Assembly: GCA_047495785.1 (NCBI GenBank)
Contig: JBLDXI010000021.1
Span: 1,302,001-1,366,000, forward strand
DNA from: Lepidodermella squamata
Lineage: Eukaryota; Animalia; Gastrotricha
DNA: 64,000 nt
Direction of reading: 5' to 3'
Each line of letters begins with the position of its first letter. The first letter of the stretch is position 1. Below the pieces are notes generated by a model that was not told the origin of the DNA, ran no database searches, and saw nothing but the letters and a program-made list of their open reading frames with translations. The translations under genes and the position numbers were made by a program. Shown here in pieces: positions 5,611 through 59,100 of this stretch.

Positions 5611-7622
5611 TTTAATTAATTAGGTAAAATCACTCGGTTTAACTGATTGTTCTTAAAGCTGCTAGAAAAAATGAAACATACAGTGAAAAAAGGGAGCCTT
5701 TATAACGTGTAGCATTAACGTGTAACAAGACAGAACTTGACCGTGCGGAAAACAAAAAAATGTTGGCAACACGAGTGACGAAACACCTAGATCCTGCAGC
5801 GTGGTGTTATATAAATTGAAAGGGTGGTATAGGACGTCGTAGGAAGCGGCATGACATGACGAAATATAATAATATAAGTAAAACACTTCTGTGGTAAAAT
5901 AATTGAAAAAAATTCTCTCATGCTAACACAACGCCATGCTACCCAAAATACACAATTGAACCGAAAATGAGTAATACAAAAGCTACTATTCTCCCACAAA
6001 AAATTGACGGTTGGAGCCTGCATGCTGCAGCCCCGGCAGTAGCGTGCCGTTTCGTTCATACACTTGACAATTATATATCATTACAAGCACGACTGAACAT
6101 GATGATGCGTGGAAAGCATTATATATTACGAAGAATTCACTACTGTTGGCATGTATTATGAAGCCAAGAGCTAATATTATATATATTATATTGTATGATT
6201 TATATAGTGAATTCACAGAATAAAAAAGTGGCGTGATCCTTTGCACGGACGCGCGCTTTTTTATTTACCAGTGCTTTTCCAATATAATTGTTGCGCAGAA
6301 TGATGTAATAATAGCAAATAAAGCGCATTTTTTGCGCATTTACTCTTAGTAGTAAAAAACGCGCCATATGCTATATGAGCGTAGAATGAGTCACGCGCAA
6401 CCACCTTGCCGTAAGACTGCTAATGGCAAATGGCACGATGAGCCCCACCGATTTTTTCGTCACATGCCGGCATATCAAAAATTGGCGTCCTGTTGTGGAA
6501 ACAAATTCACACGTTTTTGACCGCCTAAAGGTGACCGTTTTAGGTTATCGACCTGTCGATGCCGCCGCGGCGTACAATAAAAGATAGAGAACACTGTCTC
6601 GTGGTAACGAGCCATAAAAAGTTAATCCCTAGTTCAAAGACACCTTAAATTTTGGCTAAAAGACCCGGCTTCAATTATTTATAACTGCGCATGCGGACAC
6701 ATTTTGACCTAAGGTTCAGTGAAAAATAAAGAAATATTATTGTTGTGTCTTTGAAACCAGTGAAAATACGAATATGATAATGGCGGCTGTAAAAATCAGA
6801 CGCGACGCCTGCATAAATTGCATTTTTATAAGATACATATAAGACCCAGGGCGCATCCCTTGTCGATGAAAAACACGGCGTCACGCGCTGTTTGCCCGAA
6901 TAAAGACAGTCGGGTCACAATAATGCTGAGTGCGAAATAAAAGCCTTGGCTATTAAAATTCGACATATAATCGAGTTTAGTGGTCTCAAGGATTTTTTGA
7001 ATGAACCCGTTGATAACTAAATAGCTCTTAATACCTTTAGCTTAGCGCTATTAATTTTTCTATTGATTTGTTGAACTCGTTTCACGACGTGCGCGCATTA
7101 GTCGAACAGGAAATTGATGGCATCAAGGAAATTCGATAAAGAAGCGTTTCAAAGAATCCATAAATTTTGCATAAACACATTTACGGCCTTGCGTAAGAGC
7201 AAGAGATAGAGGGTGTATTTTGGGAGTTTGCATCAATTAATTATTCGTTGCGCAATAAATTCTTCGAAGTAATCTGAGGTGAGGAATCTTCCTAATAGAT
7301 TTTCAAATAGTTTATAGTGCTAGTGGCTAGTGCTTCCACGTCAACCTTAATCTTTTGAGGTGGATGGGAGCTTCCTAGAGGTCTGAATTAAAAAAATTGA
7401 AAATCTAAAGTGCGGTTCACAAACTCGTGTGTAAAATATGTACACATTCATGATTCATTGTTCATTTTTTACGCGCAAAATTCATCTCTTGCAAAAACGG
7501 TCGAGATGCCATTTGAATCATGAACGATGAACGAAACCCGCTCACAAATTATTTGTCATAATAATTCATGATTCAAATAGCGATTTTTTTGTGTGCGAAT
7601 TAGCCAAAATAAAAAAAACTAA

Positions 7623-9711: not shown

Positions 9712-11788
9712 GGCATGTGAAGGATTTTATTTGTACCACCATCCGTCATAGACGCTCTCGGCGCGTTGACTCGAGCCTCATAACGAGTAAAATGTATCAA
9801 AACAATCATGTATGTAGTGTAAAAATATATAAAATGAGGGTAGAAGTGGTATCATGCCATTCGTTGCTGTCTATTAGAATTCGCAATGTAAAAACGTTCA
9901 ATGTAGTTGGAGCGTTATATTAAAATCCATTGGCGGCTATCAATTGTCGCGGCTGAGGAAGCTACTGCGTTTCGAAGGTGCCACGCAGGGCATTTGCTTT
10001 CAAGCACTTGTCGCGCTGTTTCATTGGCAGGCTGTATTTCCGCGACGAACTTCAGGTATTCAGCCACCTCAAGGCCGCATGCCATGGAGCGAGAGCCATA
10101 GTTCTTAAGGGCGTTTTCAAAAACATCATCAATAGCTTCGACGCGGGCATAGGCAATGACGTCGATAGGGTCGGTCTCATAGGGCAAGTCAAGGAGGGCT
10201 CGAAGGGCGTGGGCCTGTAGATCAAGAAGGTGCTGTTTTGTCGAGGGAGGCTGGCAGTAAAACGCGGGCGCCGCGTAAATAATAACAGATTCTAAAAGCG
10301 TCCTATAAAAAGACAAACACAGCCGCTTTTCGAGGACATGGCGCCGCGCCAGGCCATACAAGGCACCGACGCGGGGCTTAAGTTTAGCCGCGATACAATT
10401 AACATGATAGTTCCACGACAGTTGTGGCGTTAAGTTAAGGCCCAAATATCGCACCTTAGTCACTTGTGGAATGGGTTGCCCATAGAGCTGAAGTAGCACA
10501 GTTGGCGGTGTTCCACCGTAATGTCCAAAGATCATCGCCTCACATTTGCAAGGGTTAAGTTTCAAGCGCCAACGATTGCACCATTTTTCAGTCGCCGTGA
10601 GGCGTCGCTGGAGCCGCTTGACACATGAGGCGTAGTCTTTCCCGTATGCCCAATTAATCGCGTCGTCGGCGAAGGTCGCCTTCCCAACTCGGCGCATGCC
10701 GTCGTCCGGGGCGAAAGACTTTGGCTGCATTTCTGCCGCGTAAAAAATAAAAAGTAGAGGAGACAAAGGCGACCCCTGTGGTACGCCGCAAAAAATATTT
10801 TTACTATCGCTGAGTTCGGATCCTACTCTTACCCGGAATGACCTGTCTTTTAAGAAGTCGGAAATCCATCTAACAATTGAAGTAGGAACACCAGACTGTT
10901 TTAGTTTGTACCTAAGACCATCGTGCCAGATGCAGTCGAAAGCGGCTTTGAAATCCAACAGAAGAGCAACTAATTTATATTTTTTAGACAGGGCTATACC
11001 AATATCACTGATGAAAAGGAAAATTGCATCGATGGTGGACCTAAGTGAGCGAAAACCGAATTGGTGGGCAGGCAGAAGTTTGTGTTTTTCGATAAAATAG
11101 TATAGAAATTTAGCAACAATAATTTCCAAACCTTTGGCCAGCGTTGGCAGGAGCGACACGGGCCTATATGACTCTGGGAGACGCGAATCTTTCCCTTCTT
11201 TCAAAATAGGTACAATAATAGCAATTTTCCAAACTAACGGTACGTAGCCGCTGTTCAAACTCAACTTATAGAGACATCGCAGGTGTTTAACCAGAGGCGA
11301 GCCCCCGCGCTTTAGAAGCACGTTTGAAACGTTATCATGCCCAGGGGCCTTCCACTTCAAACCTTTGAGCATTTGACGCACCGCCCATTTGGGCACATCA
11401 ACTGACTGGTCCGTCGGTATCGTCTCGAGCGGCTTCAGGCTGTCGTCGTTCGCCACCTCAGAGCTGACCTGCTGCCAGAATTTAACATCTTCTGCCCTGT
11501 TTGAAGTGACAGGCGGTCCTTCGGCGACTTTGCCGAACGTTTCCGCTAAGAGCTCGGCCTTACCCCTGTCTTCTAAAATATTCGTACCTTGTGCATTGCG
11601 AAGAGTGGCAATTTTCCTCTGGCGGCGTCGACGTGACAGCTTCGAATTGACGGCCTGCCATGCTGACCTGCTTTTACTTTCATTAAAAAGCTTCGCGATT
11701 TTCCTGAGAAATTTTTCGCACTCGGCGATTTTTTGATTCAGCACTAGGCGCCTGATGATATTGCTCAGCGTATTGATTTCGGCTTTGA
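9712..11788 (-). mobile_element. 5'-truncated non-LTR retrotransposon (Jockey/I-like) with an uninterrupted reverse-transcriptase ORF (9915-11744)
   Basis: KAPGHD, YRPVSLL, QFGFR, LLDFKAAFD, GVPQGSPLSPLLF, FADD, YLG motifs. AATAAA near the 3' end (~9725). Candidate 7-bp TSD ATCATTT at 9705-9711 and 11789-11795. Confidence 0.92.
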
Positions 11789-34423: not shown

Positions 34424-35596
34424 ATGGAAAAAACTTTTTTGGCATTGTTGCTATTACACGTTACGTCCTGTTTGTGCCAAGACATCGATAACCCTAAGCT
34501 GAGGGATCCTTTCGTCAGTGAACTTTTCGCTCAAGCCGATTCGGAATGCAGCGCGCCCGAAGGCGACGGCCTTATGTTCTCGTGTGAACACCGCACCCCG
34601 GCTGTTGTAGCCGTCGAAGCTGGCGAATCGCTCACACTCAACTGCAGCGTCTCAGGCTCTCGAAACCCTGTTGTTCGGTGGATAAGGAATCGCAAAACTA
34701 TCGCAATGGTAATTTCTAGAAAAATTAAGGTTAATAATTCAAGACCATTTTTTCCGGTATTTTAGGGTGGTTCTCGTTCTCGACGTGGCGCTGGCCGCCC
34801 GTTCCTCAGGACCGAGCTGCTTCACCACGTGATCAACTGCGCTACGCCGAAAGATGCTGGCATCTATGAGTGCGTAGGCCAGGCCGATGGTGTTGTCATT
34901 CGTCAAGTTACCAACGTCTTTGTAATCACCGATAAGTCAAACAACGGCGTCGCTAAGTGCGCCGCATCAGCGCAGGCTAAGCGCGCGCCCCGCATCTACG
35001 CATCGACCGAGACCATTTTCGACGCACCCGAGGCGAAAGCGCGCCTCACGTGCCGCGCCTCAGGCTCGCCTGCGCCCACCATCTCATGGTACAAACGGCA
35101 AATGGACATGAGTTTTGCCAAGATTGAAAACAAAGTAGCTGGTCACTTGATCCAACCTAACGGCGACCTATTGATACCACCGCTATCCCTCGACCCGATT
35201 CACTTTTCCGAATACAAATGCGAGGCGAAAAATGAAGTTGGCGAGGATTCTGCTACAACCTACATTCAAGTGGTGAGTGGTTACGCGTTTAATTATATGT
35301 CCTAATTAATTTTATTTTTATTCTAGATGCCAACAGCAACACAAGAGGAGTTGGCAATGTTGGCTCCTGAGCGCGGCGAAGCTCCCGTTGAAGCTTTCGA
35401 TGACGCGGAAACTGGCTCTGAAGATGACTTACTAGCGCTAAAAAAGCGGAAACGAAACCGCCGACAATTATTTTGGCAACTAGCTGACGCCGACACGGAC
35501 ACGCATGAGGTGAACGAGGACGACGTCGCGGAACAGCTATCTAGATTGTCGACAGGAGATCTTGTTAGCCTTATAGACCGGCTCGAACAGCAATGA
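34424..35596 (+). CDS. Secreted two-Ig-domain protein, ImpL2/ZIG (insulin-binding-protein)-like, with an acidic C-terminal extension
   Basis: Signal peptide MEKTFLALLLLHVTSCLC. Ig1 LTLNCSVSG..P.VRW...INCATPKDAGIYECVG; Ig2 LTCRASGSPAPTISW...PNGDLLI...YKCEAKNEVGEDS. Introns ~34709-34765 and ~35273-35326. Confidence 0.7.
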
Positions 35597-38519: not shown

Positions 38520-39450
38520 ATGCCTTACAAATCAGAAGCCGAGGTTGGTTATTTTTTATGTTCGATTTCGCAATTTTTCTTATAAATTTTTTAGTTGGAG
38601 GAGTTGCGGAAAAACCTCTACGACACCGTGTGGCCTCTGGTCGGCGACATTGAGAATAAAAACTGGAAGCTGAAAGCTGGCACTGATCGCGAAACGACCG
38701 GCCTCGTGTACAAAAGCCATCACGAGACCTTGGGAACCCAATGGAAGGTCGAGGTACATAATTTTCCTGAATTTTGATAGCTTTTTGTAACATTATTTTG
38801 TCAATGTGACAGGCCGTTTTGGACATATCACCTGGGCAATACTTCGAAACTATATTGATGAAGCCTGAAATGACCGATTGGATACCGAATTTAGCCGATT
38901 ACAAGGTGATCGAGCGGAGTCCGAACAGAGACTGGGAGGTGACGTATTCCCACGCGTCAAAAATGGGACCGATTTCAGCCAGGTACCATTTTTGAAAACA
39001 TTGTTCTGATTCTACAGTTCGCCCTTCCAGAGATTTTGTAAATATCAATTTCTACAAGACCCTCGAAGGAGGCCAACAGCTGGGTATAATCGCGGAAACT
39101 GAACATCCTGACATGCCGGATAAATCAAGCGAAGGAATAGTTCGGTTTGTATTTCCTTAAATTATGTGAAATAAGGCTATTTATACGCTGTTTTAGCGGC
39201 CAATATTTACCATCGGCTAATTACCTTGTGCCACTGGAAGGGAATCCGAACAAGTGTACTTTTTACTGGCTAAATAATGTCGATCTCAAGGCATGAAGTT
39301 TCAAATCTGATTACCAACTTATTGAATTTTTACCAAATAATTTAGGGATATTTACCGAGACAACTGATCAACCTGGCAATGAGCAGCGTCATGCTCGATT
39401 TCGCTGCAGCTCTGATTGGCAAAGCCAAGAAAATCAACTCGGCGAATTGA
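38520..39450 (+). CDS. START-domain protein, paralog 8 (5 introns, last one GC-AG)
   Basis: MPYKSEAE|LEELRK..., GPISAR|DFVNINF, IVR|GQYLPSA, NNVDLK|GYLPRQLIN...NSAN*. Confidence 0.88.
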
Positions 39451-39805: not shown

Positions 39806-40733
39806 ATGGCTTTCAAATCAGACGCTGAGGTTCGATCAATCTTTCAAATTGAGAACTCCAAATTATTTTCTTTAAAGTTGGCAGATATTCGAAACAGCCT
39901 GTATGAAATTATTTGGCCGTTGGCTAGCGATACAGAAAATAAAACTCATTGGTCTCACAAATCTGGCAGCAACCGCGAGAAGACGGGAATCGCGTATAAG
40001 GGACATCACGATAAGATCGGCACGACTTGGAAAATTGAGGTGGGTGATGTTTGTATTTCAAGGGCTGAGGTTTGATCGTTATAATTTTCAAGGTAATTAT
40101 CGATATCACTCCGAAACAATTTTTCGAGAAAATTATCCTTGCCAATGACATGTCGTGGGTGCCGAATCTCAAGCAATACAGCGTAGTCGATAGGGGAGCG
40201 AAGAATGATTGGGCAGTTATTTACAATTTCACGTCAAATATTGGCCCGGTTTCAGCCAGGTAATTCCAGGTAATTTACAATTTGAGCTGAAAAATGGTCT
40301 ATTCACAGGGATTTCGTGAACATTAATTTCCACTATCCTGATATTGGAGAGGGCTCCTGTTTGATAACAACAATCGGAATCGAACATCCCAACGCACCTC
40401 CAGTAGCTAAAAACGTGGTCAGGTTCGAGTCTTAAAATCCCATTCATTTTTTAATTTAAGGCAATTATATTGAAGAGGCCAGTATCTGCCATCGGCTTGT
40501 TACTTGAGGCCACACCCCGAAGATCCTAAGCGATCAGTCCTTCATTGGATAAGTAATGTCGATATGAAAGTAAGTTTGTTGTACAAGTTATTGTTGAGAC
40601 TTTACCGGCATGATTTCCCTATAAACAGGGCCTTATACCTAAAAGCGTTGTAAATCTCGCGATATCGACTTTCATGTTGGAGTTTGGGGAGGCTATTATA
40701 GCCAAAGCTAAGCAAATGTCGGCCGAACAGTAA
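39806..40733 (+). CDS. START-domain protein, paralog 9 (5 introns)
   Basis: MAFKSDAE|LADIRN..., GPVSAR|DFVNINF, VVR|GQYLPSA, SNVDMK|GLIPKSVVN...AEQ*. Confidence 0.88.
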
Positions 40734-41175
40734 CAGCGGGAAAAACTATAAATGCGCTTTTCAATTCAAGAACTATTCCCTTGTCGCTTTTGAAATCGAA
40801 AATAATGAACCATTAATGAACCTTTGCTGTTGTGCCTTCTATATTTTCCTTGTCCATATTGTAAATAAAAAATAAACCCTTTCTGGTTCGACGTGAGAAT
40901 AAAATTGGTCGAATCATGGTTAAACTCTTTGGAAAACATATATTTTATGAATGCTGTTAAAAAAAGTACTATTGTTAATGTAAAAGGCGGCCATCATTCA
41001 GAAATAATTCATGAATTGTCGGCTTCGCGCGGTCAAAAAATGACATCGTAGAATGCCAATTTTTGACCGTCCATTGCGGCTGTATAAAAAAGCCGAGATC
41101 AGAAGAAGGACCTCGCAGTTTCATCTCGGTTTTTCAGAGAAATCCACCAATTTTAAACAGAACCAAGCACTAGCC

Positions 41176-42105
41176 ATGGCTTTCAAATCATCCCAAGAGG
41201 TAAATTTTTCACGCGATAAGATGAGTGTAAGTGTAATCTCCATATGTCTAGCTTGCTAATATCAGAGACAATTTGATGCAAGTAATCTGGCCGCTGGTGA
41301 CCGACTTCGAGAACAGAACGTTTTGGTCGAGAAAAGACGGCAAGGACGTTGAAACGACTGGCATTGTTTACAGCGGCGATCACGAAAAATTAGGAACAAT
41401 TTGGAAAACGGAGGTAAAAATCTTCGAATATTCTTAAGTTCTAGAGTCAGCAAAAGAGTTTTTAAGGTTGTCATCGATGTCTCGCCTGATCAGTTTTTTC
41501 AAAGTGTCTATCTTGCAAATGATATGAGCTGGATTCCGAACACAAGCAACAGGGTTGAAATCGATAGGAGCCCTGAGAATGATTGGAATGTTACCTATTT
41601 CTGCTCGCCGGCTCTCAATGCAGTATCAGGCAGGTAAGACTTTTCCGTCAATTCGTGTAGCTAGTTTCTATGCTTGCAAATTTGCCAGAGATTTTGTCAA
41701 CGTCAATTTTTTCTACCCACCGATGAACGACGGTGCAAGGCTCGTGACTACAGTTGCTATCGAACATCCAAAAGCTCCGCCTGTCACGAAGGATTTAGTT
41801 AGGTTCGGCCGGATTTTCATACTTTTTATATCCTTCTTAGTTCTTGAATTTCAGAGGCGAGTATAGGCCATCTGCTTGCTTCATAAGGCCGTATCCTAGT
41901 GACCCGAGACGTAGCCTTTTGAGTTGGATAAGTAATGTTGACCTCAAGGTACCAGTGACCTCACCAACATCGTGAAAGTAGCTTAAAGATTGTTTTTCAG
42001 GGAATTATTCCGAAATTCATGGTGAATATGTCGCTTTCCAGCTTCATGCTCGAGTTTGGAGAGGCAGCTATTAAAAAGTCGAGGCAAATCGCATCAGGGC
42101 GATAG
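41176..42105 (+). CDS. START-domain protein, paralog 10 (5 introns)
   Basis: MAFKSSQE|LANIRD..., AVSGR|DFVNVNF, LVR|GEYRPSA, SNVDLK|GIIPKFMVN...SGR*. Confidence 0.88.
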
Positions 42106-42202
42106 AAATTGAGAAGCTAATCAACTTCGATTCTTAAATCGACTCCTCAGACCATGCTTCAGTTCCTGATGATTTCAGGATATATGCTTGATGTAAAACG
42201 AG

Positions 42203-42519
42203 TACCGTGACGCGCCCAAAATTTGGACACCCCAAATTTGGACACTTTGAGCTTTAGCCCCAAATGTCAATTTGTGCATAACTGATAAAAATGTAAAAAT
42301 TTCACTGAAAAATAGCTCCCTTCATGGGCTTTCCAACGGTTCCAAATTTGCCAGACTTTCATGTACTATCGATTTGCGAAAAATCGCCGATGCTCGATCA
42401 CTCAGAAAGGTGTTTTGGGACCCCCCTGCCAAACGCTCACCAATGAACGGTTGGGGCTGAAATTTTTTTGCACATAGGGATTTACTAAACTAAATTCTGT
42501 AAAATTTCCCGTTACGGTA
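42203..42519. mobile_element. Small MITE-like element (Tc1/pogo-type ends)
   Basis: Ends TACCGTGACG...AAAATTT and AAAATTTCCCGTTACGGTA are inverted repeats. Internal direct repeat AAATTTGGACAC x2. Confidence 0.5.
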
Positions 42520-43180
42520 CTTAAATATATTTATTTACACTTCCCACAATTCCCGTGAATAAAACTAAAGGCGACAGAGTGTTCACAACTTTCAATAAAA
42601 ATTTGGCATCCACTTTTGATTCTTAACTATTCAGAAAGTATTGACAATAAAATCCTGACAGGGCTGATTTTCTAGGCGGTGTTCCTAATCGCAAATATTT
42701 CCTGATAAGAAGAAGCCGATGAGTGAAATCTTCGTCATTTTTTTCATTTCAGGGACATTTTTTCCAAATTTAACTCCTATTTTTATCGATTTAGGCCCCT
42801 TTCCCTGGTGTAGACAGTGCTCCCTTTGATATCTCCTTCATTTATTGTTTTATTGAGTTCTTGACAAGCGGAAAACTGCTAGCGCGAACCAGGAAATGAA
42901 AAACTAGTGACGAATCATGTCGGCATGCATAAACATACTAGTTTCAGAGATATCTCCTTCTTATTCATCTATGAAAACCAAAATTACTATAAACGGATTT
43001 TAGAGACGAATTAAAATATAAAATTCGTGTTTTTTATACAATAAATCCTGTTCTATACAGCGCCTCTATATATATCATTTAGTTTTAATTCAGGCGTAGA
43101 CAGCCTATCCATGCGCATCGAATGCACTGCAGTCAGCTTTCACCGTATCAGTTTGCCGAATAAAAACCAGCTCAACACTA

Positions 43181-45452
43181 ATGAAAACATTCATCTGTCT
43201 CATTTTCCACATTTTGATCTCCTGTGAGAGATCGCTGTCGTCGGATGTCTATTGCCCAAGCTTCGTTCATGCTCATCGCAAATCCCTAACCACTAATATC
43301 ACCTGCGTGATTGCAGATGATACGGATACGCAGGTGAAACTCGACAAGGTTCGGTGGTACACATCAGCAGATCCAGCAGATCAGCACTTTTCGCTCGCCC
43401 CTGGGTCTACTTACGGCAAATATTCCTTCAGCTTAATGCAACTGAACGAATCTGCTATCGAAGCGAAATTGACTATTGAAGGAACGCTTCAGCCCTCGGA
43501 CTATACAAACTACTACCTTTCAGCGATTATACCTGGGAAAGGCCTTGTGACCTCTAAAATCACTCTAACAGAGAGGGGCCAAGGAATAGCGAAGTTTGAG
43601 TGGTGGGATTATGTGATATTCGCCCTCATTCTAGTTATTTCATCGGCAATCGGAGTTTACTATGGATTTTTCGGTAACAAGCAGAACAGCCAGGCGGAAT
43701 ACATGTTAGGCGGCCGTCAAATGGGCTGGGTGCCTGTATCCCTAAGCCTGTTAGCCAGCTTTTGCTCTGCTATCACAGTTCTAGGCACCCCTAGCGAGAC
43801 TTACACCTTTGGAACACAATACTCGATGATTTCATTTGCCTACCTCTTCATGGCTGCTGCTGCGGCTCACGTCTTCCTGCCAATTTTCTACAACCTTAAA
43901 ATCACAAGTGCTTACGAGTACTTGGAAATGAGATTCTCGAAGCCTGTTCGCCTTATTGGCGCCGTTATTTTTGTTATTCAAATGGTGCTTTACATGTCTA
44001 TGGTGATTTACGCGCCCAGTTTGGCTCTGGAAGCTGTCCTTGGGTTAAATTTCTGGTTTTCAGCCTTAACAACTGCTGCGGTATGCATTTTCTACACATC
44101 GCTGGGCGGCATGAAGGCGACAATGTGGACAGATGCTTTTCAAGTGATAATGATGTATGTGGGTGAGTTTCGATCCGCTGGAGACAAGTTTTTAACCTCA
44201 ATCTTCGTGTCTTTTTCCAAGGTTTCTCCGCAATCCTGATTCAGGGTTGTATTAGAGAGGGCGGGTTCGGCAAAGCTTGGGAACGAGCTGCCGAGAGAGG
44301 TCGAATACAGTTTTTTAACATGGACCCGGATCCTCGAATTCGGCACTCGTTTTGGACGGTCACCGTCGGCGCAACATTCACTTGGGCCTATACGTACGGC
44401 GTAAATCAGACCCAGGTTCAAAGAGGACTTTCAACGCGGTCGTTGCGAGATGCGAAAATTGCTTATTGGCTTAACATCCCTGGGCTGATTTTGATGCTTA
44501 TACTTCCGGTTATGATTGGAGTTGTAGTATTTTCCCACTATCGGGATTGCGACCCAGTAAAAGCTGGTAGGTTTCTTCCTCTTTTTCCTCCATTCCTATT
44601 CTTCGCTATTCGAAAGGTTTAATTACGAAACGAGACCAGCTGCTGATTTACTATGTTACCGATGTTGTAGCCGAGGATTTGCCCGGAATTCCCGGCCTGT
44701 TCATCGCTACATTGTTCTCAGCCGCTCTATCGACGATTTCATCGGGAATTAACGGCTTAGCAGCAGTTACTTGTCGCGATTTTGGCGTCGAGACCCTCCT
44801 GAGGTCGAAGGGTTACTCTGAAGGTCGAATTACGTGGATTGCCAAAGTCATTTCAGCCCTTTACGGCGCGTTATGTATACTGCTAATTTTCCCTATCCAA
44901 TACCTACCAGGACTTCTGGACTCAGCGCTCGGGCTATTTGGAGCCTTAGGTGGTCCGCTATTAGGAATTTACATTTGCGGAGTCTTTGTGCCCTGGATCA
45001 ACAAATTCGGAGCCTTAGCCGGCCTTTTGTCATCACTAGCAATCACTATATGGATGACCCTCAGTGAAAAGATGTCCCCGAATGTCCCATCCGCTCAACG
45101 ATTGCCATCAGTGTCAACGCTCGGATGCGAGAATGCGATTTTGCCTAAGCCGATTATTCCGAAATTTTACCCCGAAAGGCCGCTTGATTTCAACAGGCTG
45201 GATGGAATTGAAAATTTTTATGCAATTTCTTATTTTTATTTGTCAATTATTGGCATTGTCATCTCGGTCGTTGTTGGCCTGGCCGTTAGTGCTGTTACTG
45301 GCTGGAAAAAATTGGAGGATTTTCACGACCCGCGACTACTGCACCCAAGCGTTTACCAACTTAATTCTTTCTTTTTCAAATCAAAGCGCAGCAATTTTGT
45401 GGGACAGAATTGTGAATTTATCGAAAAAGATCAGGAAACTCGACATCTTTAA
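43181..45452 (+). CDS. SLC5 sodium:solute symporter (SMVT/SMCT/NIS-like) with an N-terminal signal peptide and Ig-like domain
   Basis: SLC5 motifs WDYVIF..IGVYYG, YMLGGRQM, SLSLLASFCSAITVLGTPSE, SAYEYLEMRF, YTSLGGMKATMWTDAFQ, DPDPRIRHSFW, YGVNQTQVQR, PGLFIATLFSAALSTISSGIN. Introns ~44163-44221 and ~44567-44617. Confidence 0.93.
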
Positions 45453-46011
45453 ATCTATTAAAATAAAGAAATTTGTCGCGTTTTTACTGGATTTTGAAGT
45501 AGAATATCTATTAGAAGAATAGTGGAAGAATAAGAGATGGAAGAGAAGGAGGAGGAAGAAAAGCCGAAATTTATTCTCAGATGACGAAAGATATAGAGCA
45601 TCTATAATACAACCGGTGCACTTATTGATCCGCGCATCGTAAAAGCGAGGTTTATTCAGTGCAGTTTTTACGAGACCTGTGAGACTACGGCAAAATTACA
45701 TGTGAAAAATTACTATGCGTAATATATGAATGTAGCCTTTGTGTATACGTACATCGCAGTACCAGAATGACATTTTGAAAATGCTTTCACGCAGTGATAT
45801 AATACCTATACCATTTCACGGTGGCGTTGAATATAAATCCCGCTTACGTTTATTATAAAGCGCTGAATGTTCTGCGCAGAGATTCTAGTCCTACTGTCCC
45901 GGCCTGATAATAGAGTCATCCTACATAATGATCCTGTGGTTGCTTTGCCTGAATAGCACATTCTCGTTATTTTTAAGGTGTAGTAATACACCGCCGTCGG
46001 CGCCGAGTAAA

Positions 46012-46433
46012 ATGTAAGTGCAAGTTTCTTATATAAATATACTAGTAAAAGCTTCTTCTTAATCACAGGGGAGCAAATATGGTCAACTATCAACAGCTTC
46101 AGGACATGATGAAACACGGGAAAACTGTCATTGTTGATGTCCGCGAGCCCCATGAACTCGTCACAGATGGCAAAATTCCGAACTCAATTCATCTACCTCG
46201 TAAATTAACTGGGAATATTACTGATACTTAATTAATCAATTTTTCAACTATCAGTGGCTGAAATTGGGCATTTCGCATCGAAAATTCCATGCGAAAAAAC
46301 CGATAACATCGTGTTATACTGCCGATCGGGAGCACGGGCTGGTGATGCTGCTTCAACGTTGAAAGACATGGGCTACTCTAAGGTCTATGTTTTCCCGGGT
46401 GGCGTTCGGGAGTGGATGGCCAATCAAAAATAG
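46012..46433 (+). CDS. Single-domain rhodanese/sulfurtransferase, copy 1
   Basis: IVDVREPHE, GKIPNSIHLP, active-site loop LYCRSGARA, FPGGVREW; missed by the ORF track because of two introns. Confidence 0.88.
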
Positions 46434-46853: not shown

Positions 46854-47277
46854 ATGTGAGATTTTATTATTTGATAATATTATATTTAAGCTCAACGAGG
46901 GTAATTTTTATAGGGCCTCGAACCATGTGAATTATCAACAGATCAAGAACCTCATGGAATCAGGTAAAACAGTGATCGTCGACGTCCGCGAAGCTTCTGA
47001 ACTCGTTACCGATGGCAAAATTCCAATCAGCGTCCATCTACCCCGTGATTTTTAGATGAATCTTTATTTATTCATAATTAATTTCTAATATAATGCAGTT
47101 GGTGAAGTCGGCGATTTCCCCTCCCGTGTTGACAGCTCCAAAACTGATAATGTTGTGTTATACTGCCGATCTGGAAACCGGGCGGGTAAAGCTGCAGTTG
47201 TGCTCAAGGAGCTGGGTTATACGAATGTTTTCGTCTTCCCTGGCGGTGTCAAAGAATGGATGGCCAATGAAAAGTAA
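46854..47277 (+). CDS. Single-domain rhodanese/sulfurtransferase, copy 2
   Basis: IVDVREASE, GKIP.SVHLP, LYCRSGNRA, FPGGVKEW; same intron positions as copy 1. Confidence 0.88.
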
Positions 47278-51866: not shown

Positions 51867-54144
51867 TCATTGAGGCTGGACGACAGGTGAAATGACAGGC
51901 TGATTAATAACTTGGCCAGCAGCAACAGGAGCAGCATAGCTGTAAACTTGGGTAGCACCTTGAGTCGGGTAAACCGGGGCAGCAACAGGAGTAGCGTAAT
52001 TGTAAACTAGGGTAGCACCTTGAGTTGGGTAGACCGGGGCAGCAATCACCTGAGGCGCCCGACATTGACTTTTCCAGATTCCGTAGAAAAAATACAGCAC
52101 GAATCCGAGGAACATCCACCCAGCAAACCTCACCCACGTCGGCGCATCGAGCGAAACTAGCAGGTAGAAGTTGACAGTTAGGGCTAGCACCGGGATGAAA
52201 GGCGAGAGGGGCACTTTGAACGTCTTGAAGTGCAAATTCTGCGGCAGAAGCCACAGCCTGAACGTAAATACCGTTGCAATAAGGCCGAAAAACACAATCA
52301 GCACCAACGGCCAGAAATCACCGGGCCAAGATACTACCGTTGTCTGAATCATCAGGAACAACACACTCATGAAAACGGCAACCATGACCAGCATAGAGAC
52401 TAAGGTTGCAAGGAGGGATGTGAAAGGTGTAGCTACTTCGCCGTATCTTTTGAAGTTGACGATTCCAATCAGCAATTCCAGCTTCGTTGGCCAACCTTCA
52501 TGGCGGCCTGCAGTAAGCTGGACAGTATCAGAAGTAGACACAGATGCTTCATTCACAGGATTCTGATCATCGCCATCATCTGTATCAATGAAATGAGCCC
52601 TATACCGAAGAACTAGGACCGAAGCTGCTACTAACGAATATGCACAAAGTGTTCCTATTGAGAGCATGTTAACCAAAGCATTCACATCGAATATCGCGGC
52701 GAAAAATGCTGTCATCAAGCCGGAAATCATCGTGGCGATGAAAGGCGTTTTCAGTCTGCGGTCTATGCGACCGAGAAAGGAGAACAACAAACCGTCTTCT
52801 GACATGGCGTAAATGATGCGAGGCATCGGAAACATGAGGCCTAGCGCGTTAGTAACCACGCCCAGTAGAGCAGCACCGGCTATGGTAGGTGCGCCCCCTG
52901 GCACCTTAGCTAACAGGTTGAACGGCTCTAGGGCGTAATAAGGCGTATTCATCGTGAAGACAATGGACATTCCGACGTAGCAAACCGTGCAGAGCCCCAG
53001 TGATAGGACGATACTCAGCGGGATGTTACGCTGCGGTTTGTAGACCTCCTCGCCGGTGGTTGCAATGCAATCGAATCCAATGAAAGCGTAGAAGGCCATC
53101 GAAGCGGCTGTCATCACTCCACCAAAGCCGTACGGCATGAAACCTCCTGTCCCAAAACTGGTTACGTTAGCGGCTTGAGCGGCTTCTTGAGCTTGCTCGG
53201 CGCTAATGCTCCAGAGAGATGTATCGATGTAGAATGGGCCAACGATGATGATGTAAGCTGTCACGCCTACGTTGAGCAAGACGAGGAAATTGTTGAGCGT
53301 AGTTGATTCCTTTACACCAATCGCCAGTAAAACTGTTAACCAAGAATTAAGATAGGTGAAACATATCACCGAATTAATCAACCTGTTAGGACGAAAACGA
53401 TCCCAAACGCAAGAGGATCAAAATAGGCCCCCAAATAAGGTAGCCCGATCGGGAGATACTTGGTGAAGGTAGTGCTTAAAACTCCGTTTGCGAGAACATC
53501 GATGTACGTCACAGCAGCACGAGCGACGCTAGCAGCTCCAATAACGTATTCCTAAGATTTCGAAAAGAAATTAAGGATAAGTATGTTTGATTCATAATAA
53601 TGAAGCGTACCAAGATCATATTCCAGCCGACGATAAATGCCCAAAGTTCTCCGACTGATACGTAGGTGTAAACGTAAGCTGATCCGGCTCGCGGCAATCG
53701 TGCACCCATCTCAGCGTAACAGAGACCGGAAAAAAGCGCTGCAATACCAGCTATGATAAAGGACAGGAACATTGCCGGGCCACTCTGGAAATTTAAAATG
53801 AGGTTTCAGTCAATTTTTCCTATCTTCCTGACTTACATGCAACCTGCCTGCGTCAGGAGCTGGTTTCAGAATAAAAATTGATTACTAGGTTTGGGCGGTG
53901 AGTTTGAAAATTTACCTACAACCTATAAATAAAATAAGACAGAATTATTGGTTGAAACTTTGCGACTGATCATTGATCTTACGTAGATTCCAGCCCCCAA
54001 CATTGAGCCGGTTCCCAGACATGTTAATTCAATCAGGCCCAAGCATCGCTCCAGAGCTGTATCTCCCAGATGATTGACTTCGAATTTCTTCTTTCGAATA
54101 AGCCAAGCTGGAGTGAAACTCCGCCAATTCATGTTGAGAGGCAT
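51867..54144 (-). CDS. Cationic amino acid transporter (SLC7A1-4/CAT family)
   Basis: [97 protein letters not shown]. Confidence 0.93.
51918..52045 (-). repeat. 60-nt coding tandem repeat (~2.1 copies) in the C-terminal tail of the CAT transporter
   Basis: [20 protein letters not shown] / [20 protein letters not shown]. Confidence 0.9.
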
Positions 54145-56181: not shown

Positions 56182-59100
56182 CTAGTTGGAAGATTCATCG
56201 TGGTCAAACTCGCCCAGGGCCTCGGCCGGTCGAATCCGCGGCTTTCGAGCAGGCGGCATAGGCGGCAGGCGAACCGACGGTTGTTGCCCGTTCTGAGGCG
56301 CCTGGTAAATCGGCTTTTTCGTCGGCGGTTTCATGCGCCACTGAATGACAGGGCGGTTGCCGGTCAGGCGCGAGTATTTCGTCGAAGCAACGTAGCAAGA
56401 CTTGACCGTTAGAACGACAGCTTCCATCAGATTTCGAGCCGCCTGGATCAACGACGTCGCAGATTCGAGCGAGTGGTGAGCAGCCAACTCGCCGCTGATA
56501 TTTTCCACATCCGCCTTAACTTTACTGCAAATACTCAATTGATGGCAGTGAAGCGTGATTCGCTGTAAATACGCGAATAAATCTTTTTTCGTTATCGAAT
56601 CAGGGCACTGGTCGCCGACTGATGTCGCCAGCTTGTCTAGCCGCTGGCCCAAGTCCGAAATTCGACGCGCTGCTTGGATAACGTCCATTACAGTGCGAAG
56701 CGGGCCGCGATTTCTCGTGAAATCCGTCATCTCCATCATAATAGCACACATTTGCTTCGACAGCTGAATCAACTCGTTGCCCGCTTCGTCCCATTTGCCG
56801 ACCTCCTTGTTGAAGCGCATTCGTTCCTGCCGGAAATACTCGATTTGCTCGCGAATTTGTTCACGCTGCTCAGCCGACCACGCCATGACCATTTGCTCAC
56901 GCTCGGACGGACCCTGAGCCGAGGTGTCTCGGGCGGTTGATTCGCGAACTAAATCCTCCTGTTCGGCGGTAAAACGGCTCGACGCTCGACTCGACGATTG
57001 CGGGTTCAGTTGCGGTGCCGGGTCGAACATCATGTCAACCATCGATTCAGACGGCTGTAACTGCGGCGCCATTTGGCTGGTTAGCATCATATCTGGCGGT
57101 GGGCCTAGAATCCGGCAGGCATCGGCGGAGGCTTCGTACAACTGCCTCGCCGAGTCGACAACCGCATTTTCGTCCAGCTGGTCGAGTTGACCCGATGCCA
57201 GCGCTTTCATCGCAGCACTGGCGATTTGCAGGAAAGCAGGCAGGGCGACATCGTTAAGCTGGGCGGCCGATGCCCTGAGACGGTCGGCTAGCGGGTCGCC
57301 GGGTGGTAAGCTATCTGCGTAGGCGTTCAGCCGCTGGCAAAGGCGTAACACCCTGGCCCTGACCAGCGCAACGCTTTGCTCGAAAGCAGCCGCGTCGCCT
57401 TGTTGCAAGAAAGCAACGCATTTGTTCACGTCCTCCAAAACATGATCTTCGCAAATCGCGAAAAAATCGTCGACGGCCGTCAGCGCGTCAATGCCGCCCA
57501 TCAACACGAAAACCCCGTCCAGCCATGCGCCTTTAAATGTTTCAGCGCAGTCGATGGCTTGGTTCGACTGGGGCCGGTAGCCCAGCAGACGGGCGACCGG
57601 CGGCATCAGATGAGCGAGGTCGTAGATTTGGGCGACGGACATAGCGACAGCGCGGATGGTTCGGTCGTCCGACGAAATTGCGCAGGACATGCGCGATACA
57701 GCCAGCATTTGAGCTGCATGCTCTTTAAACATAGATGCGTAACGCTCGACTGCTGCCGTATCGCCTTGCTGGGCGGCTGACATAAGCGCTAACAAAGGAG
57801 CAGCTGGGTCGACAAAACAGTCAGAAACGTTATCAGTAACAGCTCGTCGAAGCTGGAAAAATGATCACTTAGTTTAAAGCCTCCTTAAAAAAATCATCAA
57901 ATTAACTTACATGAACCCGCAAATTGCTCATTTTCTGCAACAAATTGTCCATGCAACGAGGAATCGCATCGCTGGGACGTCCAGTAGCCACACTCACAGC
58001 GTATTCTCGTAAAATATCCTGTAACGCCTGGCGCATCATGTTACACTCGTTAACAATTTGCTGGCGATGTTCTTCGCGAGTGCAGTGTGAATCGGCGATA
58101 TGGGCAGCACCTGAAACAACTGACTCGAGTCGGGCCTCGAAAAACGGACGCATTCTAGCTTCGTCGTAAGTCAGTGGGTCGATGGTGATTTGTTGCAGAA
58201 ATTCGTCAACGTCGATTTCTAGATCGCCAACGCCGGCCGGCCCGCTTCGAAGTTGCGGCGCCAGGTTAGCCGGCCGTTGGGCGATTTTCCCGCTAGCCGC
58301 CAAAGCCATGCGAATTAACGCATCGTCTATCGCAGCTACAGCGGAATCTCTCGCTTCGGCTGATTCTCTCACGTCAGGATGACGGATATGCGCCTGTAAA
58401 TCACCCGCAACGTTATAAAAGTTTTTTAATCAGAATTTTTCTTTTACTTTTCCGGCTGCAAGCATCAACTCAATGCTCCGTTTCAAATCAAGTCGTGCTG
58501 CCGAAAGCTCGTCCTTACTTCTCACATCCATCAAGTCAGCAGTCCTAGCAGCCGCTAGTACGTCGGTGTGTTGCCATATGTTAGTCACATCAGCCACATT
58601 TTTGGCATATAGACCTTGGTTATCACCACTTGCCAACAGGTTGTGAATATGCTCGCGCAGCTTAATGAGCAATAAAATTGTTATCTTAAAGGCTAATTAG
58701 CATAATAAAACGACGTTAACGTACCACTTGGTGAATGTGCCCTAACTCAGCCAAGTCGAGGGAGTCGGCCGCAGCTAATAGGCGAGCAACGGCGAAAAGC
58801 AGTTGTCGGGCAGTAACGGAAACTGCAGTGCGTGATTCAGGCGAAAGAGGGTGGCTAATCGACAGTAAGAAAATTATATAGGTAGATATTTAATTATCAA
58901 GCGAAATTGCCTCTAACCTGCACATAAATTCAACTGATTGATGGAGACCAACGCCGGCCTCTCGAACGTTCTGAATAGCAGCGGTTAGTTCATTATGCAG
59001 CTCGTGGTTTGAAGCAAAAAGATGACTCTTCTCTTCGAAGCAATACTCCATTTGTCGAGCGAGATTATCCACAGATGAGTCTATCGCCTCGAGTGTGGTT

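What the first reader, a model, noticed from the sequence alone, without database searches (positions are those of the whole stretch)
43181..43620. Signal peptide and Ig-like domain fused in frame to an SLC5 sodium-solute symporter
Seen: one uninterrupted exon encodes a signal-peptide-like segment (MKTFICLIFHILISCERSLS), then ~110 aa with an Ig-fold pattern (NITCVI...VRWY...AKLTI..LQPSDYTNYYL..; F-strand Cys replaced by Leu, an extra A-strand Cys in VYC, sequons NIT and NES), running directly into the SLC5 first helix (FEWWDYVIF). Known: SMVT/SMCT/NIS-type SLC5 proteins start with a short extracellular N-terminus and have no Ig domain, while unrelated SLC16 monocarboxylate transporters need separate Ig ancillary subunits (basigin/embigin). 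Inference: this may be a transporter with a built-in extracellular Ig module for trafficking, adhesion or ligand capture (a transceptor). I do not know this architecture from any described protein.
Basis: partly seen in the sequence, partly recalled or inferred. Interest (0 to 1): 0.85.

Follow-up and report, generated by a model that had tools for sequence, protein, structure and literature searches.

The report
Sodium transporter with built-in Ig domain
A small invertebrate's gene for an ordinary sodium-driven nutrient transporter (SMCT/SLC5A8 type) carries, in the same exon, a secretion signal and one antibody-like (Ig) domain at its outer end. I found this layout in only one other unidentified animal, in none of about 230 relatives from other phyla and in no paper; what the domain does, and whether it is in the mRNA, remain untested.

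Summary
Exon 1 (43181-44162) is one open frame. It encodes a signal-like hydrophobic start (aa 1-20), about 110 aa with Ig hallmarks (C42, W59, L97/I99, D107, Y111, Leu113 at the F-strand Cys position), then helix 1 of an SLC5 transporter.

- **Transporter:** Pfam SSF matches from aa 174. The best solved relative is human SMCT1, whose residue 5 aligns with aa 134. Three exons give 720 codons.
- **Ig fold:** The N-terminal part has no Pfam hit. A single-sequence AlphaFold model (core pLDDT 74-85) matches only Ig domains, both in Foldseek and in an exhaustive VIA search (Z 9.8-12.6). The best match is Kirrel3 Ig5, which is also the only borderline sequence hit (E 0.009).
- **Distribution:** A homologous extension (E 4e-8) with the same Cys pair, a shared sequon and an ERGQG junction sits on two SMCT-like genes of an unidentified animal in ENA metagenomes. 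The other 228 relatives examined lack such a domain; 226 have N-terminal tails of 36 aa or less.
- **Same genome:** The scan noted a second such gene elsewhere in it (s1-374263), which I did not test.
- **Open:** RNA evidence is inconclusive and function is inferred.

Verdict: a real, lineage-restricted new variant of a known transporter family, of moderate interest.

The parts
43181..43240 (+). Start codon and signal-peptide-like segment (aa 1-20: n-region MK, hydrophobic core TFICLIFHILIS, small residues S-L-S before the likely cut)
   Evidence: Kyte-Doolittle window above 1.6 centred on aa 6-11. The same feature is at the start of P0005 and of the L005 ORF. In-frame stop 27 codons upstream. 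No SignalP tool was available.
43241..43570 (+). Divergent Ig-like (I-set/V-set-like) ectodomain, aa 21-130. Cys25 and Cys42 are conserved, the F-strand Cys is replaced by Leu113, and there are sequons at N39 and N89.
   Evidence: AF2 single-sequence model has strands at 37-45, 58-60, 81-89, 92-100, 110-117 and 121-128, with block pLDDT 66-85. Foldseek gave at least 204 PDB hits at E<=1e-3; all 50 matches shown are Ig-fold domains. VIA exhaustive search: all 50 top rows are Ig domains, Z 9.8-12.6. ESM Atlas shape and feature searches return only IgSF clusters. Profile against PDB sequences: Kirrel3 Ig5, E 0.0087. No Pfam hit.
43571..43594 (+). Short junction ERGQGIAK (aa 131-138) between the last strand and helix 1. 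ERGQG is invariant in the three family members.
   Evidence: Alignments A1-A3. Human SMCT1 residue 5 aligns with aa 134.
43595..44162 (+). Rest of exon 1: SLC5 helix 1 onward (aa 139-327 and the first base of codon 328)
   Evidence: Pfam SSF 7.3e-22. SMCT1 7SL9 E 7.9e-66, SMVT 3.8e-60, NIS 4.4e-51.
44163..44221 (+). Intron 1 (59 nt, GTGAGT..AG, phase 1)
   Evidence: Sequence and exon bookkeeping. The neighbouring gene has 49-59 nt GT..AG introns in spliced contigs.
44222..44566 (+). Exon 2, middle of the transporter
   Evidence: Translated in its own frame it continues the SSF sequence. Exon lengths 982+345+836 = 721 codons including the stop.
44567..44616 (+). Intron 2 (50 nt, GTAGGT..AG, phase 1)
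44617..45452 (+). Exon 3, C-terminal half of the transporter with the SAALSTISSG sodium-site motif, and stop TAA at 45450-45452
   Evidence: Pfam SSF 5.6e-08. SMCT1 residues 317-572, E 3.3e-43, with SAALSTISSGINGLAA aligned to [16 protein letters not shown].
45462..45467 (+). AATAAA, likely polyadenylation signal, starting 10 nt after the stop
   Evidence: Sequence; inference only.

Best explanation
This is an intact three-exon gene for a 720-aa SMCT-type (SLC5A8/SLC5A12-like) sodium-coupled transporter. The usual few-residue extracellular N-terminus has been replaced by a cleavable signal peptide plus one fast-evolving, probably N-glycosylated Ig-like domain, joined to helix 1 by an eight-residue junction (ERGQGIAK). 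Shown: the open frame, the SSF identity, the Ig-like predicted fold, and homology of the extension in a second animal. Inferred: the signal peptide is there because a folded domain of about 110 aa cannot be carried across the membrane by helix 1 acting as a reverse signal-anchor. The domain would then sit on the outer face of the transporter next to helix 1. It most likely acts as a built-in accessory module for folding, surface delivery, stability or placement through protein contacts. That is the job separate Ig subunits (basigin, embigin) do for SLC16 monocarboxylate transporters. The transport core itself probably works like SMCT1. The family appears restricted to a small spiralian lineage; other notes of this scan suggest the genome is a gastrotrich.
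For: ORF and gene model. SSF. SMCT1 is the best solved relative, and its residue 5 aligns with aa 134. Ig fold; protein-language-model neighbours are all Ig clusters at 0.87-0.89; Kirrel3 Ig5 at sequence level, E 0.0087. Homologous extension in P0005 (E 4e-8, 26.5% identity over 113 aa), with signal peptide, a Cys pair at the same 17-residue spacing, an aligned N-x-S/T sequon (NES/NDT) and ERGQG. P0005 and P0006 lie in ordinary animal gene neighbourhoods on four assemblies from two studies. None of 228 other SMCT-like proteins from many phyla has such a domain; 226 have tails of 36 aa or less, and the two longer tails (77 and 90 aa) lack a signal start and look like annotation artefacts. DNA contigs of a close relative (X2) cover 42950-43488 and 43562-43842; the only indel listed there lies upstream of the ATG. 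The first in-frame ATG after M86 is M175, beyond helix 1, so a start inside this exon would give no working transporter.
Against: No RNA evidence: the RNA-like run X1 has no contig on 43183-43580. It has almost none on exon 2 either, so it decides nothing. No Pfam Ig model matches, and the canonical B-F disulfide is absent (sequence). The independent fold of P0005's extension was low confidence: pLDDT 45, beta-rich only. The extension diverges far faster than the core, about 27% against about 70% identity. In the second paralog of the other animal it is split over two reading frames, so the constraint on it may be weak. The accessory-module role rests on analogy only.
Confidence: 0.6

Rival explanations
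1. The Ig part is coding, but the main transporter isoform skips it. An upstream or spliced-leader acceptor near 43563-43571 (tcactctaacag|AG) would give a normal short-N-terminus SMCT, leaving the Ig-bearing form minor or absent.
For: Other scan notes report spliced-leader trans-splicing in this genome (not tested here). A plausible acceptor lies just before ERGQG. X1 shows no cover on 43183-43580.
Against: No ATG lies between M86 and helix 1, so such a message would need a start codon from the leader. The extension is conserved as protein, in frame and without an intron before helix 1, in two species. X1 also fails to cover exon 2, so its silence is uninformative.
Confidence: 0.1
2. The extension is a tolerated, slowly decaying relic of an old exon capture with no present function. 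The transporter works in spite of it.
For: Fast divergence, about 27% identity against about 70% for the core. Loss of the canonical Ig disulfide. The frame split in the L005-L008 paralog is identical in four assemblies. Poor AF2 confidence for P0005's copy.
Against: The signal peptide, the Cys pair at fixed spacing, one aligned glycosylation sequon and an open frame are all kept between two species whose intron positions already differ. A useless 130-aa N-terminal domain that must be translocated would be expected to be lost quickly.
Confidence: 0.15
3. The Ig domain is a true recognition module (adhesion or ligand capture), making the protein a transporter-receptor (transceptor) or anchoring it at specific cell contacts.
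For: The nearest structures are membrane-proximal Ig domains of adhesion molecules: Kirrel3 Ig5, DIP, Dscam, NCAM2, fasciclin-3 and lachesin clusters. Fast evolution is typical of recognition surfaces.
Against: A single Ig domain with no known partner. There is no cytoplasmic signalling motif tested. Structural likeness to adhesion Ig domains is generic for the fold.
Confidence: 0.12
4. Assembly or gene-model artefact: two separate genes (a small secreted Ig protein and a transporter) wrongly read as one.
For: None beyond the lack of RNA data.
Against: One uninterrupted frame with no stop, no ATG before helix 1 and no intron. The same continuity is seen in P0005 on four independent metagenome assemblies and in contigs of run X2 across the junction.
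Confidence: 0.03

Closest known systems
Human SMCT1 (SLC5A8; PDB 7SL9) and the SMCT/SMVT/NIS branch of SLC5
   Same: Transport core: exon 1 from aa 134 aligns with SMCT1 residues 5-196 (E 7.9e-66) and exon 3 with residues 317-572 (E 3.3e-43), including the S-x-x-L-S-T-x-S-S sodium-site motif. About 50-55% identity to animal SMCTs.
   Different: SMCT1 and 226 of the other 228 relatives examined have only about 9-36 residues before helix 1 and no signal peptide. Here 138 residues precede it: signal peptide, Ig-like domain and the ERGQGIAK junction.
Basigin / embigin, the Ig-domain ancillary subunits of SLC16 monocarboxylate transporters (for example PDB 6LZ0, 9L0B)
   Same: An Ig domain held at the outer face of a monocarboxylate-type transporter close to a membrane helix. 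Basigin and embigin chains are among the Foldseek and VIA matches.
   Different: They are separate single-pass proteins that partner an unrelated transporter family (SLC16, MFS fold). Here the Ig domain is covalently fused to helix 1 of a LeuT-fold SLC5 protein. No sequence relationship was shown.
Membrane-proximal Ig domain of Kirrel/IRRE-type adhesion proteins (Kirrel3 Ig5, PDB 2CRY)
   Same: Best structural match: Z 12.6, 115 residues aligned, rmsd 4.1. It is also the only sequence-profile hit near significance, E 0.0087. Atlas Kirrel and fasciclin-3 clusters align over the Ig domain plus the following helix.
   Different: 20% identity, no Pfam Ig hit, the canonical disulfide is missing, and what follows is a 13-helix transporter rather than a single anchor.
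P0005 and P0006, SMCT-like genes of an unidentified animal in ENA metagenome assemblies (loci L001-L008)
   Same: The same architecture, with a homologous N-terminal extension, the Cys pair, ERGQG and helix 1 in one exon.
   Different: 50% identity over exon 1. The first intron is at a different position. P0006's extension is split over two frames.

Membership tests
SLC5 / sodium:solute symporter family (Pfam PF00474), SMCT-SMVT-NIS branch | Match to the SSF profile above the curated cut-off | tested here: met
   Exon 1: 78.2 bits (cut-off 22.8), profile positions 1-157. Exon 3: 32.5 bits, profile positions 291-404.
SLC5 / sodium:solute symporter family (Pfam PF00474), SMCT-SMVT-NIS branch | Closest characterised relatives are SMCT1, SMVT and NIS rather than SGLT-type members | tested here: met
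   7SL9 E 7.9e-66, SMVT 3.8e-60, NIS 4.4e-51, vSGLT 1e-14 to 1.8e-18. Named database hits are SMCT1/2-like.
SLC5 / sodium:solute symporter family (Pfam PF00474), SMCT-SMVT-NIS branch | Conserved Ser/Thr-rich sodium-site motif in the helix after PG.PGLF | tested here: met
   PGIPGLFIATLFSAALSTISSGINGLAA aligns with SMCT1 [28 protein letters not shown].
SLC5 / sodium:solute symporter family (Pfam PF00474), SMCT-SMVT-NIS branch | Complete, uninterrupted coding sequence across all exons | tested here: met
   982+345+836 nt gives 721 codons including the stop, with GT..AG introns of 59 and 50 nt. Each exon was translated in its own frame. The joined protein was not built.
SLC5 / sodium:solute symporter family (Pfam PF00474), SMCT-SMVT-NIS branch | Sodium-coupled uptake of a substrate | not testable with these tools
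   Needs expression and uptake assays.
Immunoglobulin superfamily domain (I-set/V-set-like) | Two-sheet Greek-key beta sandwich with Ig strand order | tested here: met
   AF2 model core pLDDT 74-85. All 50 top rows of an exhaustive search of 48,161 PDB chains are Ig domains, Z 9.8-12.6. Foldseek probability 1.00. The model comes from a single sequence, and P0005's model was poor.
Immunoglobulin superfamily domain (I-set/V-set-like) | Match to a Pfam Ig-clan profile | tested here: not met
   No family at E<=1 for aa 21-138. hhalign against the window's own I-set exon gave no match. The only borderline result is a profile hit to Kirrel3 Ig5, E 0.0087.
Immunoglobulin superfamily domain (I-set/V-set-like) | Canonical B-strand Cys to F-strand Cys disulfide, and C-strand Trp | tested here: not met
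   C42 and W59 are present, but the F-strand position is Leu113. In P0005 the Trp is Phe. A different Cys pair (C25/C42, spacing 17) is conserved in all three members. Whether it bonds was not tested.
Basigin/embigin-type transporter ancillary subunit | Separate single-pass Ig protein that binds the transporter non-covalently | tested here: not met
   The domain is fused in one exon to helix 1. The likeness is functional analogy only.

The most novel reading that the evidence does not exclude
A lineage of microscopic spiralian animals has made a small gene family of sodium-coupled monocarboxylate-type transporters with a covalently built-in Ig receptor domain. The domain binds a partner (a cell-surface protein, matrix or microbial ligand) and so couples recognition to transport or places the transporter at defined cell contacts. 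That would be a self-contained counterpart of the basigin-MCT pair, or a true transceptor.
Probability: 0.12. Interest if true: 0.8.

Novelty: new variant of a known kind. Interest (0 to 1): 0.5.

Why it matters
Polytopic solute carriers normally acquire Ig domains only as separate partner subunits: basigin, embigin or neuroplastin with SLC16 transporters and PMCA, and beta subunits with sodium channels. A natural covalent Ig-SLC5 fusion, kept in at least two species and several paralogs, offers three things:

- A simple system to ask what an Ig module does for a transporter, by deleting or swapping one N-terminal domain.
- An example of how a signal peptide is recruited when a multi-pass protein gains a large extracellular N-terminus.
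- A case of exon capture in a poorly known phylum.

It does not change what is known about SLC5 transport itself.

Tried and rejected
1. Exhaustive HMMER of aa 21-138 against 1.84 billion representatives gave four hits, all giant bacterial repeat proteins. The match is a 40-50 aa stretch repeated up to ten times per protein and spanning repeat borders. I treat these as repeat-inflated chance matches, not relatives.
2. A word-indexed search restricted to aa 1-140 found nothing.
3. Two scans of JGI metagenome contigs, one with the family alignment and one with P0005, found no relative.
4. Pfam on the domain gave no hit.
5. Comparison with the bona fide I-set exon 8 kb upstream (34829-35302) showed no likeness. 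That neighbour is therefore not the visible donor of the domain.
6. AF2 of P0005's extension as an independent fold test had too low confidence to use.
7. RNA support: the only RNA-like run is small and patchy. A 30-nt loose end at 43690 matches nothing in the window and was set aside as a paralog or chimeric contig.
8. Polymorphism among L001-L008 was too low (0-2 differences in the gene regions compared) for any selection test.
9. Rfam scan of the window found nothing.
10. The ESM Atlas feature search with the whole of exon 1 gave no usable hit.
11. Two of the three literature searches looked for an Ig domain on an SMCT/SLC5 transporter and found nothing relevant.

Full report
**What is in the sequence**

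The ATG at 43181 opens a 352-codon ORF on the + strand, and an in-frame stop lies 27 codons upstream. The frame reads as follows:

- aa 1-20: a short basic and hydrophobic start.
- aa 21-130: a stretch of about 110 aa carrying C25, N39-I-T, C42, W59, N89-E-S, L97/I99 and D107-x-x-x-Y111-x-L113.
- aa 131-138: ERGQGIAK.
- From aa 139: FEWWDYVIF, the first helix of an SLC5 protein.

No stop, ATG or intron separates the N-terminal part from helix 1. The chance of 138 open codons at this base composition is about 2e-4.

**Gene model**

| Part | Coordinates | Note |
|---|---|---|
| Exon 1 | 43181-44162 | 982 nt |
| Intron 1 | 44163-44221 | GTGAGT..AG |
| Exon 2 | 44222-44566 | 345 nt |
| Intron 2 | 44567-44616 | GTAGGT..AG |
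| Exon 3 | 44617-45452 | 836 nt, ends in TAA |
| AATAAA | 45462-45467 | starts 10 nt after the stop |

- The exons add up to 721 codons including the stop, so the protein is 720 aa.
- Introns of 49-59 nt with GT..AG ends are seen in spliced contigs of the neighbouring gene, so these intron sizes are normal for this genome.

**The transporter part is an ordinary SMCT-type SLC5 protein**

- Pfam SSF matches exon 1 from aa 174 (78.2 bits, cut-off 22.8) and exon 3 (32.5 bits).
- Among solved structures the best match is human SMCT1 (7SL9). Its residues 5-196 align with aa 134-325 (E 7.9e-66), and its residues 317-572 align with exon 3 (E 3.3e-43). The Ser/Thr-rich sodium-site motif is included in that alignment.
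- SMVT and NIS follow, and vSGLT is far behind.
- Named database relatives are SMCT1/2-like proteins of many animal phyla at about 50-55% identity.

**The N-terminal part is predicted to be an Ig domain, but a very divergent one**

- Pfam finds nothing at E<=1.
- A single-sequence AlphaFold2 model gave a beta sandwich with core pLDDT 74-85, followed by the helix-1 helix.
- Foldseek against the PDB returned at least 204 hits at E<=1e-3; all 50 matches shown are Ig-fold domains, among them basigin and embigin in their transporter complexes.
- A search of 48,161 PDB representatives that does not depend on Foldseek gave Ig-superfamily domains in all 50 top rows, Z 9.8-12.6. The tool's own calibration puts a typical best Z at 7-8, and 4-5 at rank 50, for models without a real match.
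- The best match is the membrane-proximal Ig5 of Kirrel3 (Z 12.6, 115 residues aligned, rmsd 4.1).
- A three-sequence profile of the domain finds the same Kirrel3 chain as its only near-significant sequence hit (E 0.0087).
- ESM Atlas shape matches are Kirrel, lachesin and fasciclin-3 clusters. Language-model neighbours are all Ig clusters at 0.87-0.89, which the tool rates as a lead only.
- The canonical B-F disulfide is absent (Leu113). A different Cys pair (C25/C42) is conserved.

I rate the Ig fold at about 0.8. The caveat is that the model rests on one sequence, and the fold of the homologous P0005 segment came out at pLDDT 45.

**The extension is not a one-off**

- A search with the exon-1 ORF put two proteins from ENA metagenome assemblies on top. 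They cover 85% and 74% of the query, while all other SMCTs cover 51-64%.
- P0005 has its own signal peptide, then ECPKYVHIHRK..IICYI, an NDT sequon aligned with the window's NES, ERGQG and helix 1.
- The N-terminal part alone matches at 26.5% identity over 113 aa, E 4e-8. The Cys pair has the same 17-residue spacing in the window, P0005 and the L005 ORF.
- P0005 and P0006 lie at two different loci among ordinary animal genes (laminin-G, exostosin, BRO1, VPS13). They are found on four assemblies from two studies.
- Their first intron sits at a different position from the window's, so the two animals are not close.
- In the P0006 locus the extension is split over two frames near a T6 run, identically in all four assemblies. 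This could be a frameshift or a 41-nt intron; I could not decide which.
- Another note of this scan (s1-374263) reports a second Ig-SLC5 gene elsewhere in this genome. I could not read that DNA.

**How rare is the layout?**

- I located helix 1 in 230 SMCT-like proteins returned by two searches, covering vertebrates, echinoderms, molluscs, annelids, brachiopods, bryozoans, arthropods, hemichordates and cephalochordates.
- Only P0005 and P0006 have a structured extension.
- Two others have 77-90 aa of low-complexity sequence or sequence that is not signal-like, which looks like an annotation artefact.
- All the rest have 36 aa or fewer.
- The searches are length-limited: to 616 aa for the exon-1 query and 721 aa for the L001 C-terminal query. 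Longer annotated orthologs could have been missed.
- The exhaustive HMMER search with the domain alone found only repeat-inflated bacterial matches. It did not list the window's own protein, so this genome's proteins may not be in that library.
- The two literature searches for an Ig domain on an SMCT or SLC5 transporter found nothing relevant.

**Is the Ig part in the message?**

I could not settle this.

- The one RNA-like run (X1, same strain) has zero mismatches and spliced joints on the neighbour gene. It has no contig on 43183-43580, but almost none on exon 2 either, and only depth 1-7 elsewhere in the gene, partly from a paralog.
- The DNA run X2, about 96-98% identical, covers 42950-43488 and 43562-43842. 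The only indel listed there lies upstream of the ATG.
- Other scan notes say this genome uses spliced-leader trans-splicing and is probably the gastrotrich Lepidodermella squamata. I checked only that the window's GC content (42.7%) matches the 43% published for that genome (PMC11660948).
- A possible acceptor lies at 43563-43571. A message spliced there would have no ATG before helix 1 unless the leader supplies one.
- Protein-level conservation of the extension in two species is the main argument that it is translated.

**Most likely mechanism**

SLC5 proteins have an extracellular N-terminus (established for SGLT1 and NIS), so a signal peptide plus ectodomain in front of helix 1 is topologically sound. 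Large N-terminal ectodomains of multi-pass proteins generally need a cleavable signal peptide, which fits its presence in all three members.

The domain is tethered by only eight residues, so it should sit on the outer face next to helix 1. I propose that it is a built-in accessory module for folding, delivery, stability or placement of the transporter. This is by analogy with basigin and embigin for SLC16 transporters and is an inference, with confidence about 0.35 for this specific role.

| Question | Confidence |
|---|---|
| The architecture is real | about 0.85 |
| The domain has an Ig fold | about 0.8 |
| The domain acts as an accessory module | about 0.35 |

Its fast divergence (about 27% identity against about 70% for the core) fits either a recognition surface or weak constraint. 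The rivals are isoform skipping, a decaying relic, a true receptor function and an artefact. They are listed with their odds in the rival explanations.

**Verdict**

This is a real, lineage-restricted variant of a known transporter family. The architecture is new as far as I could search, and the function is untested.

Noticed in passing
window 34424-35305 (+): A separate IgSF gene 8 kb upstream: signal peptide (MEKTFLALLLLHVTSCLC) and at least two Pfam I-set domains (E 1.8e-07 and 4e-12). It has no sequence likeness to the transporter's Ig-like domain.
   Followed up: partly
window ~38595-39300, 39806-40805, 41273-41900 (+): Three tandem paralogs of a gene with no Pfam match (shared motif IWPL..D.ENK..W..K.G...E.TG..YK.HH..LGT.WK.E). 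The middle copy is spliced in run X1, with 49-59 nt GT..AG introns and 0 mismatches.
   Followed up: partly
window 42195-42949: A 755-bp segment is absent from contigs of both X1 and X2 (joint 42194 to 42950). Its part at 42188-42585 is high-copy (summed depth above 2000 in X2). It is probably a polymorphic insertion of a short repeat element in the transporter's upstream region.
   Followed up: no
L005 5891-6260 (also L006-L008): In the second Ig-SLC5 paralog of the metagenome animal, the signal peptide and first strands are in a different frame from the rest of the domain. The switch is near a T6 run and is identical in four assemblies. It could be a frameshift or a 41-nt intron (6015-6055).
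   Followed up: partly
window 46079-46433 and 46927-47055 (+): Tandem rhodanese-like small genes just downstream of the transporter (Pfam Rhodanese E 3.3e-07 and 3.2e-10 for the first copy).
   Followed up: no
window 9915-11744 (-), 51867-53381 (-), 56182-57795 (-): A retroelement ORF with reverse transcriptase (RVT_1, 3.8e-33), a CAT-type cationic amino-acid permease exon (AA_permease_2 and AA_permease_C), and a large vinculin exon (4.8e-118).
   Followed up: no
window 43690 (run X1): One low-depth X1 contig fits from 43690 onward but carries 54 unrelated letters before it. Their shown 30-letter consensus matches nothing in the window. It could be a paralog transcript, a chimeric contig or an unknown splice form.
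   Followed up: partly
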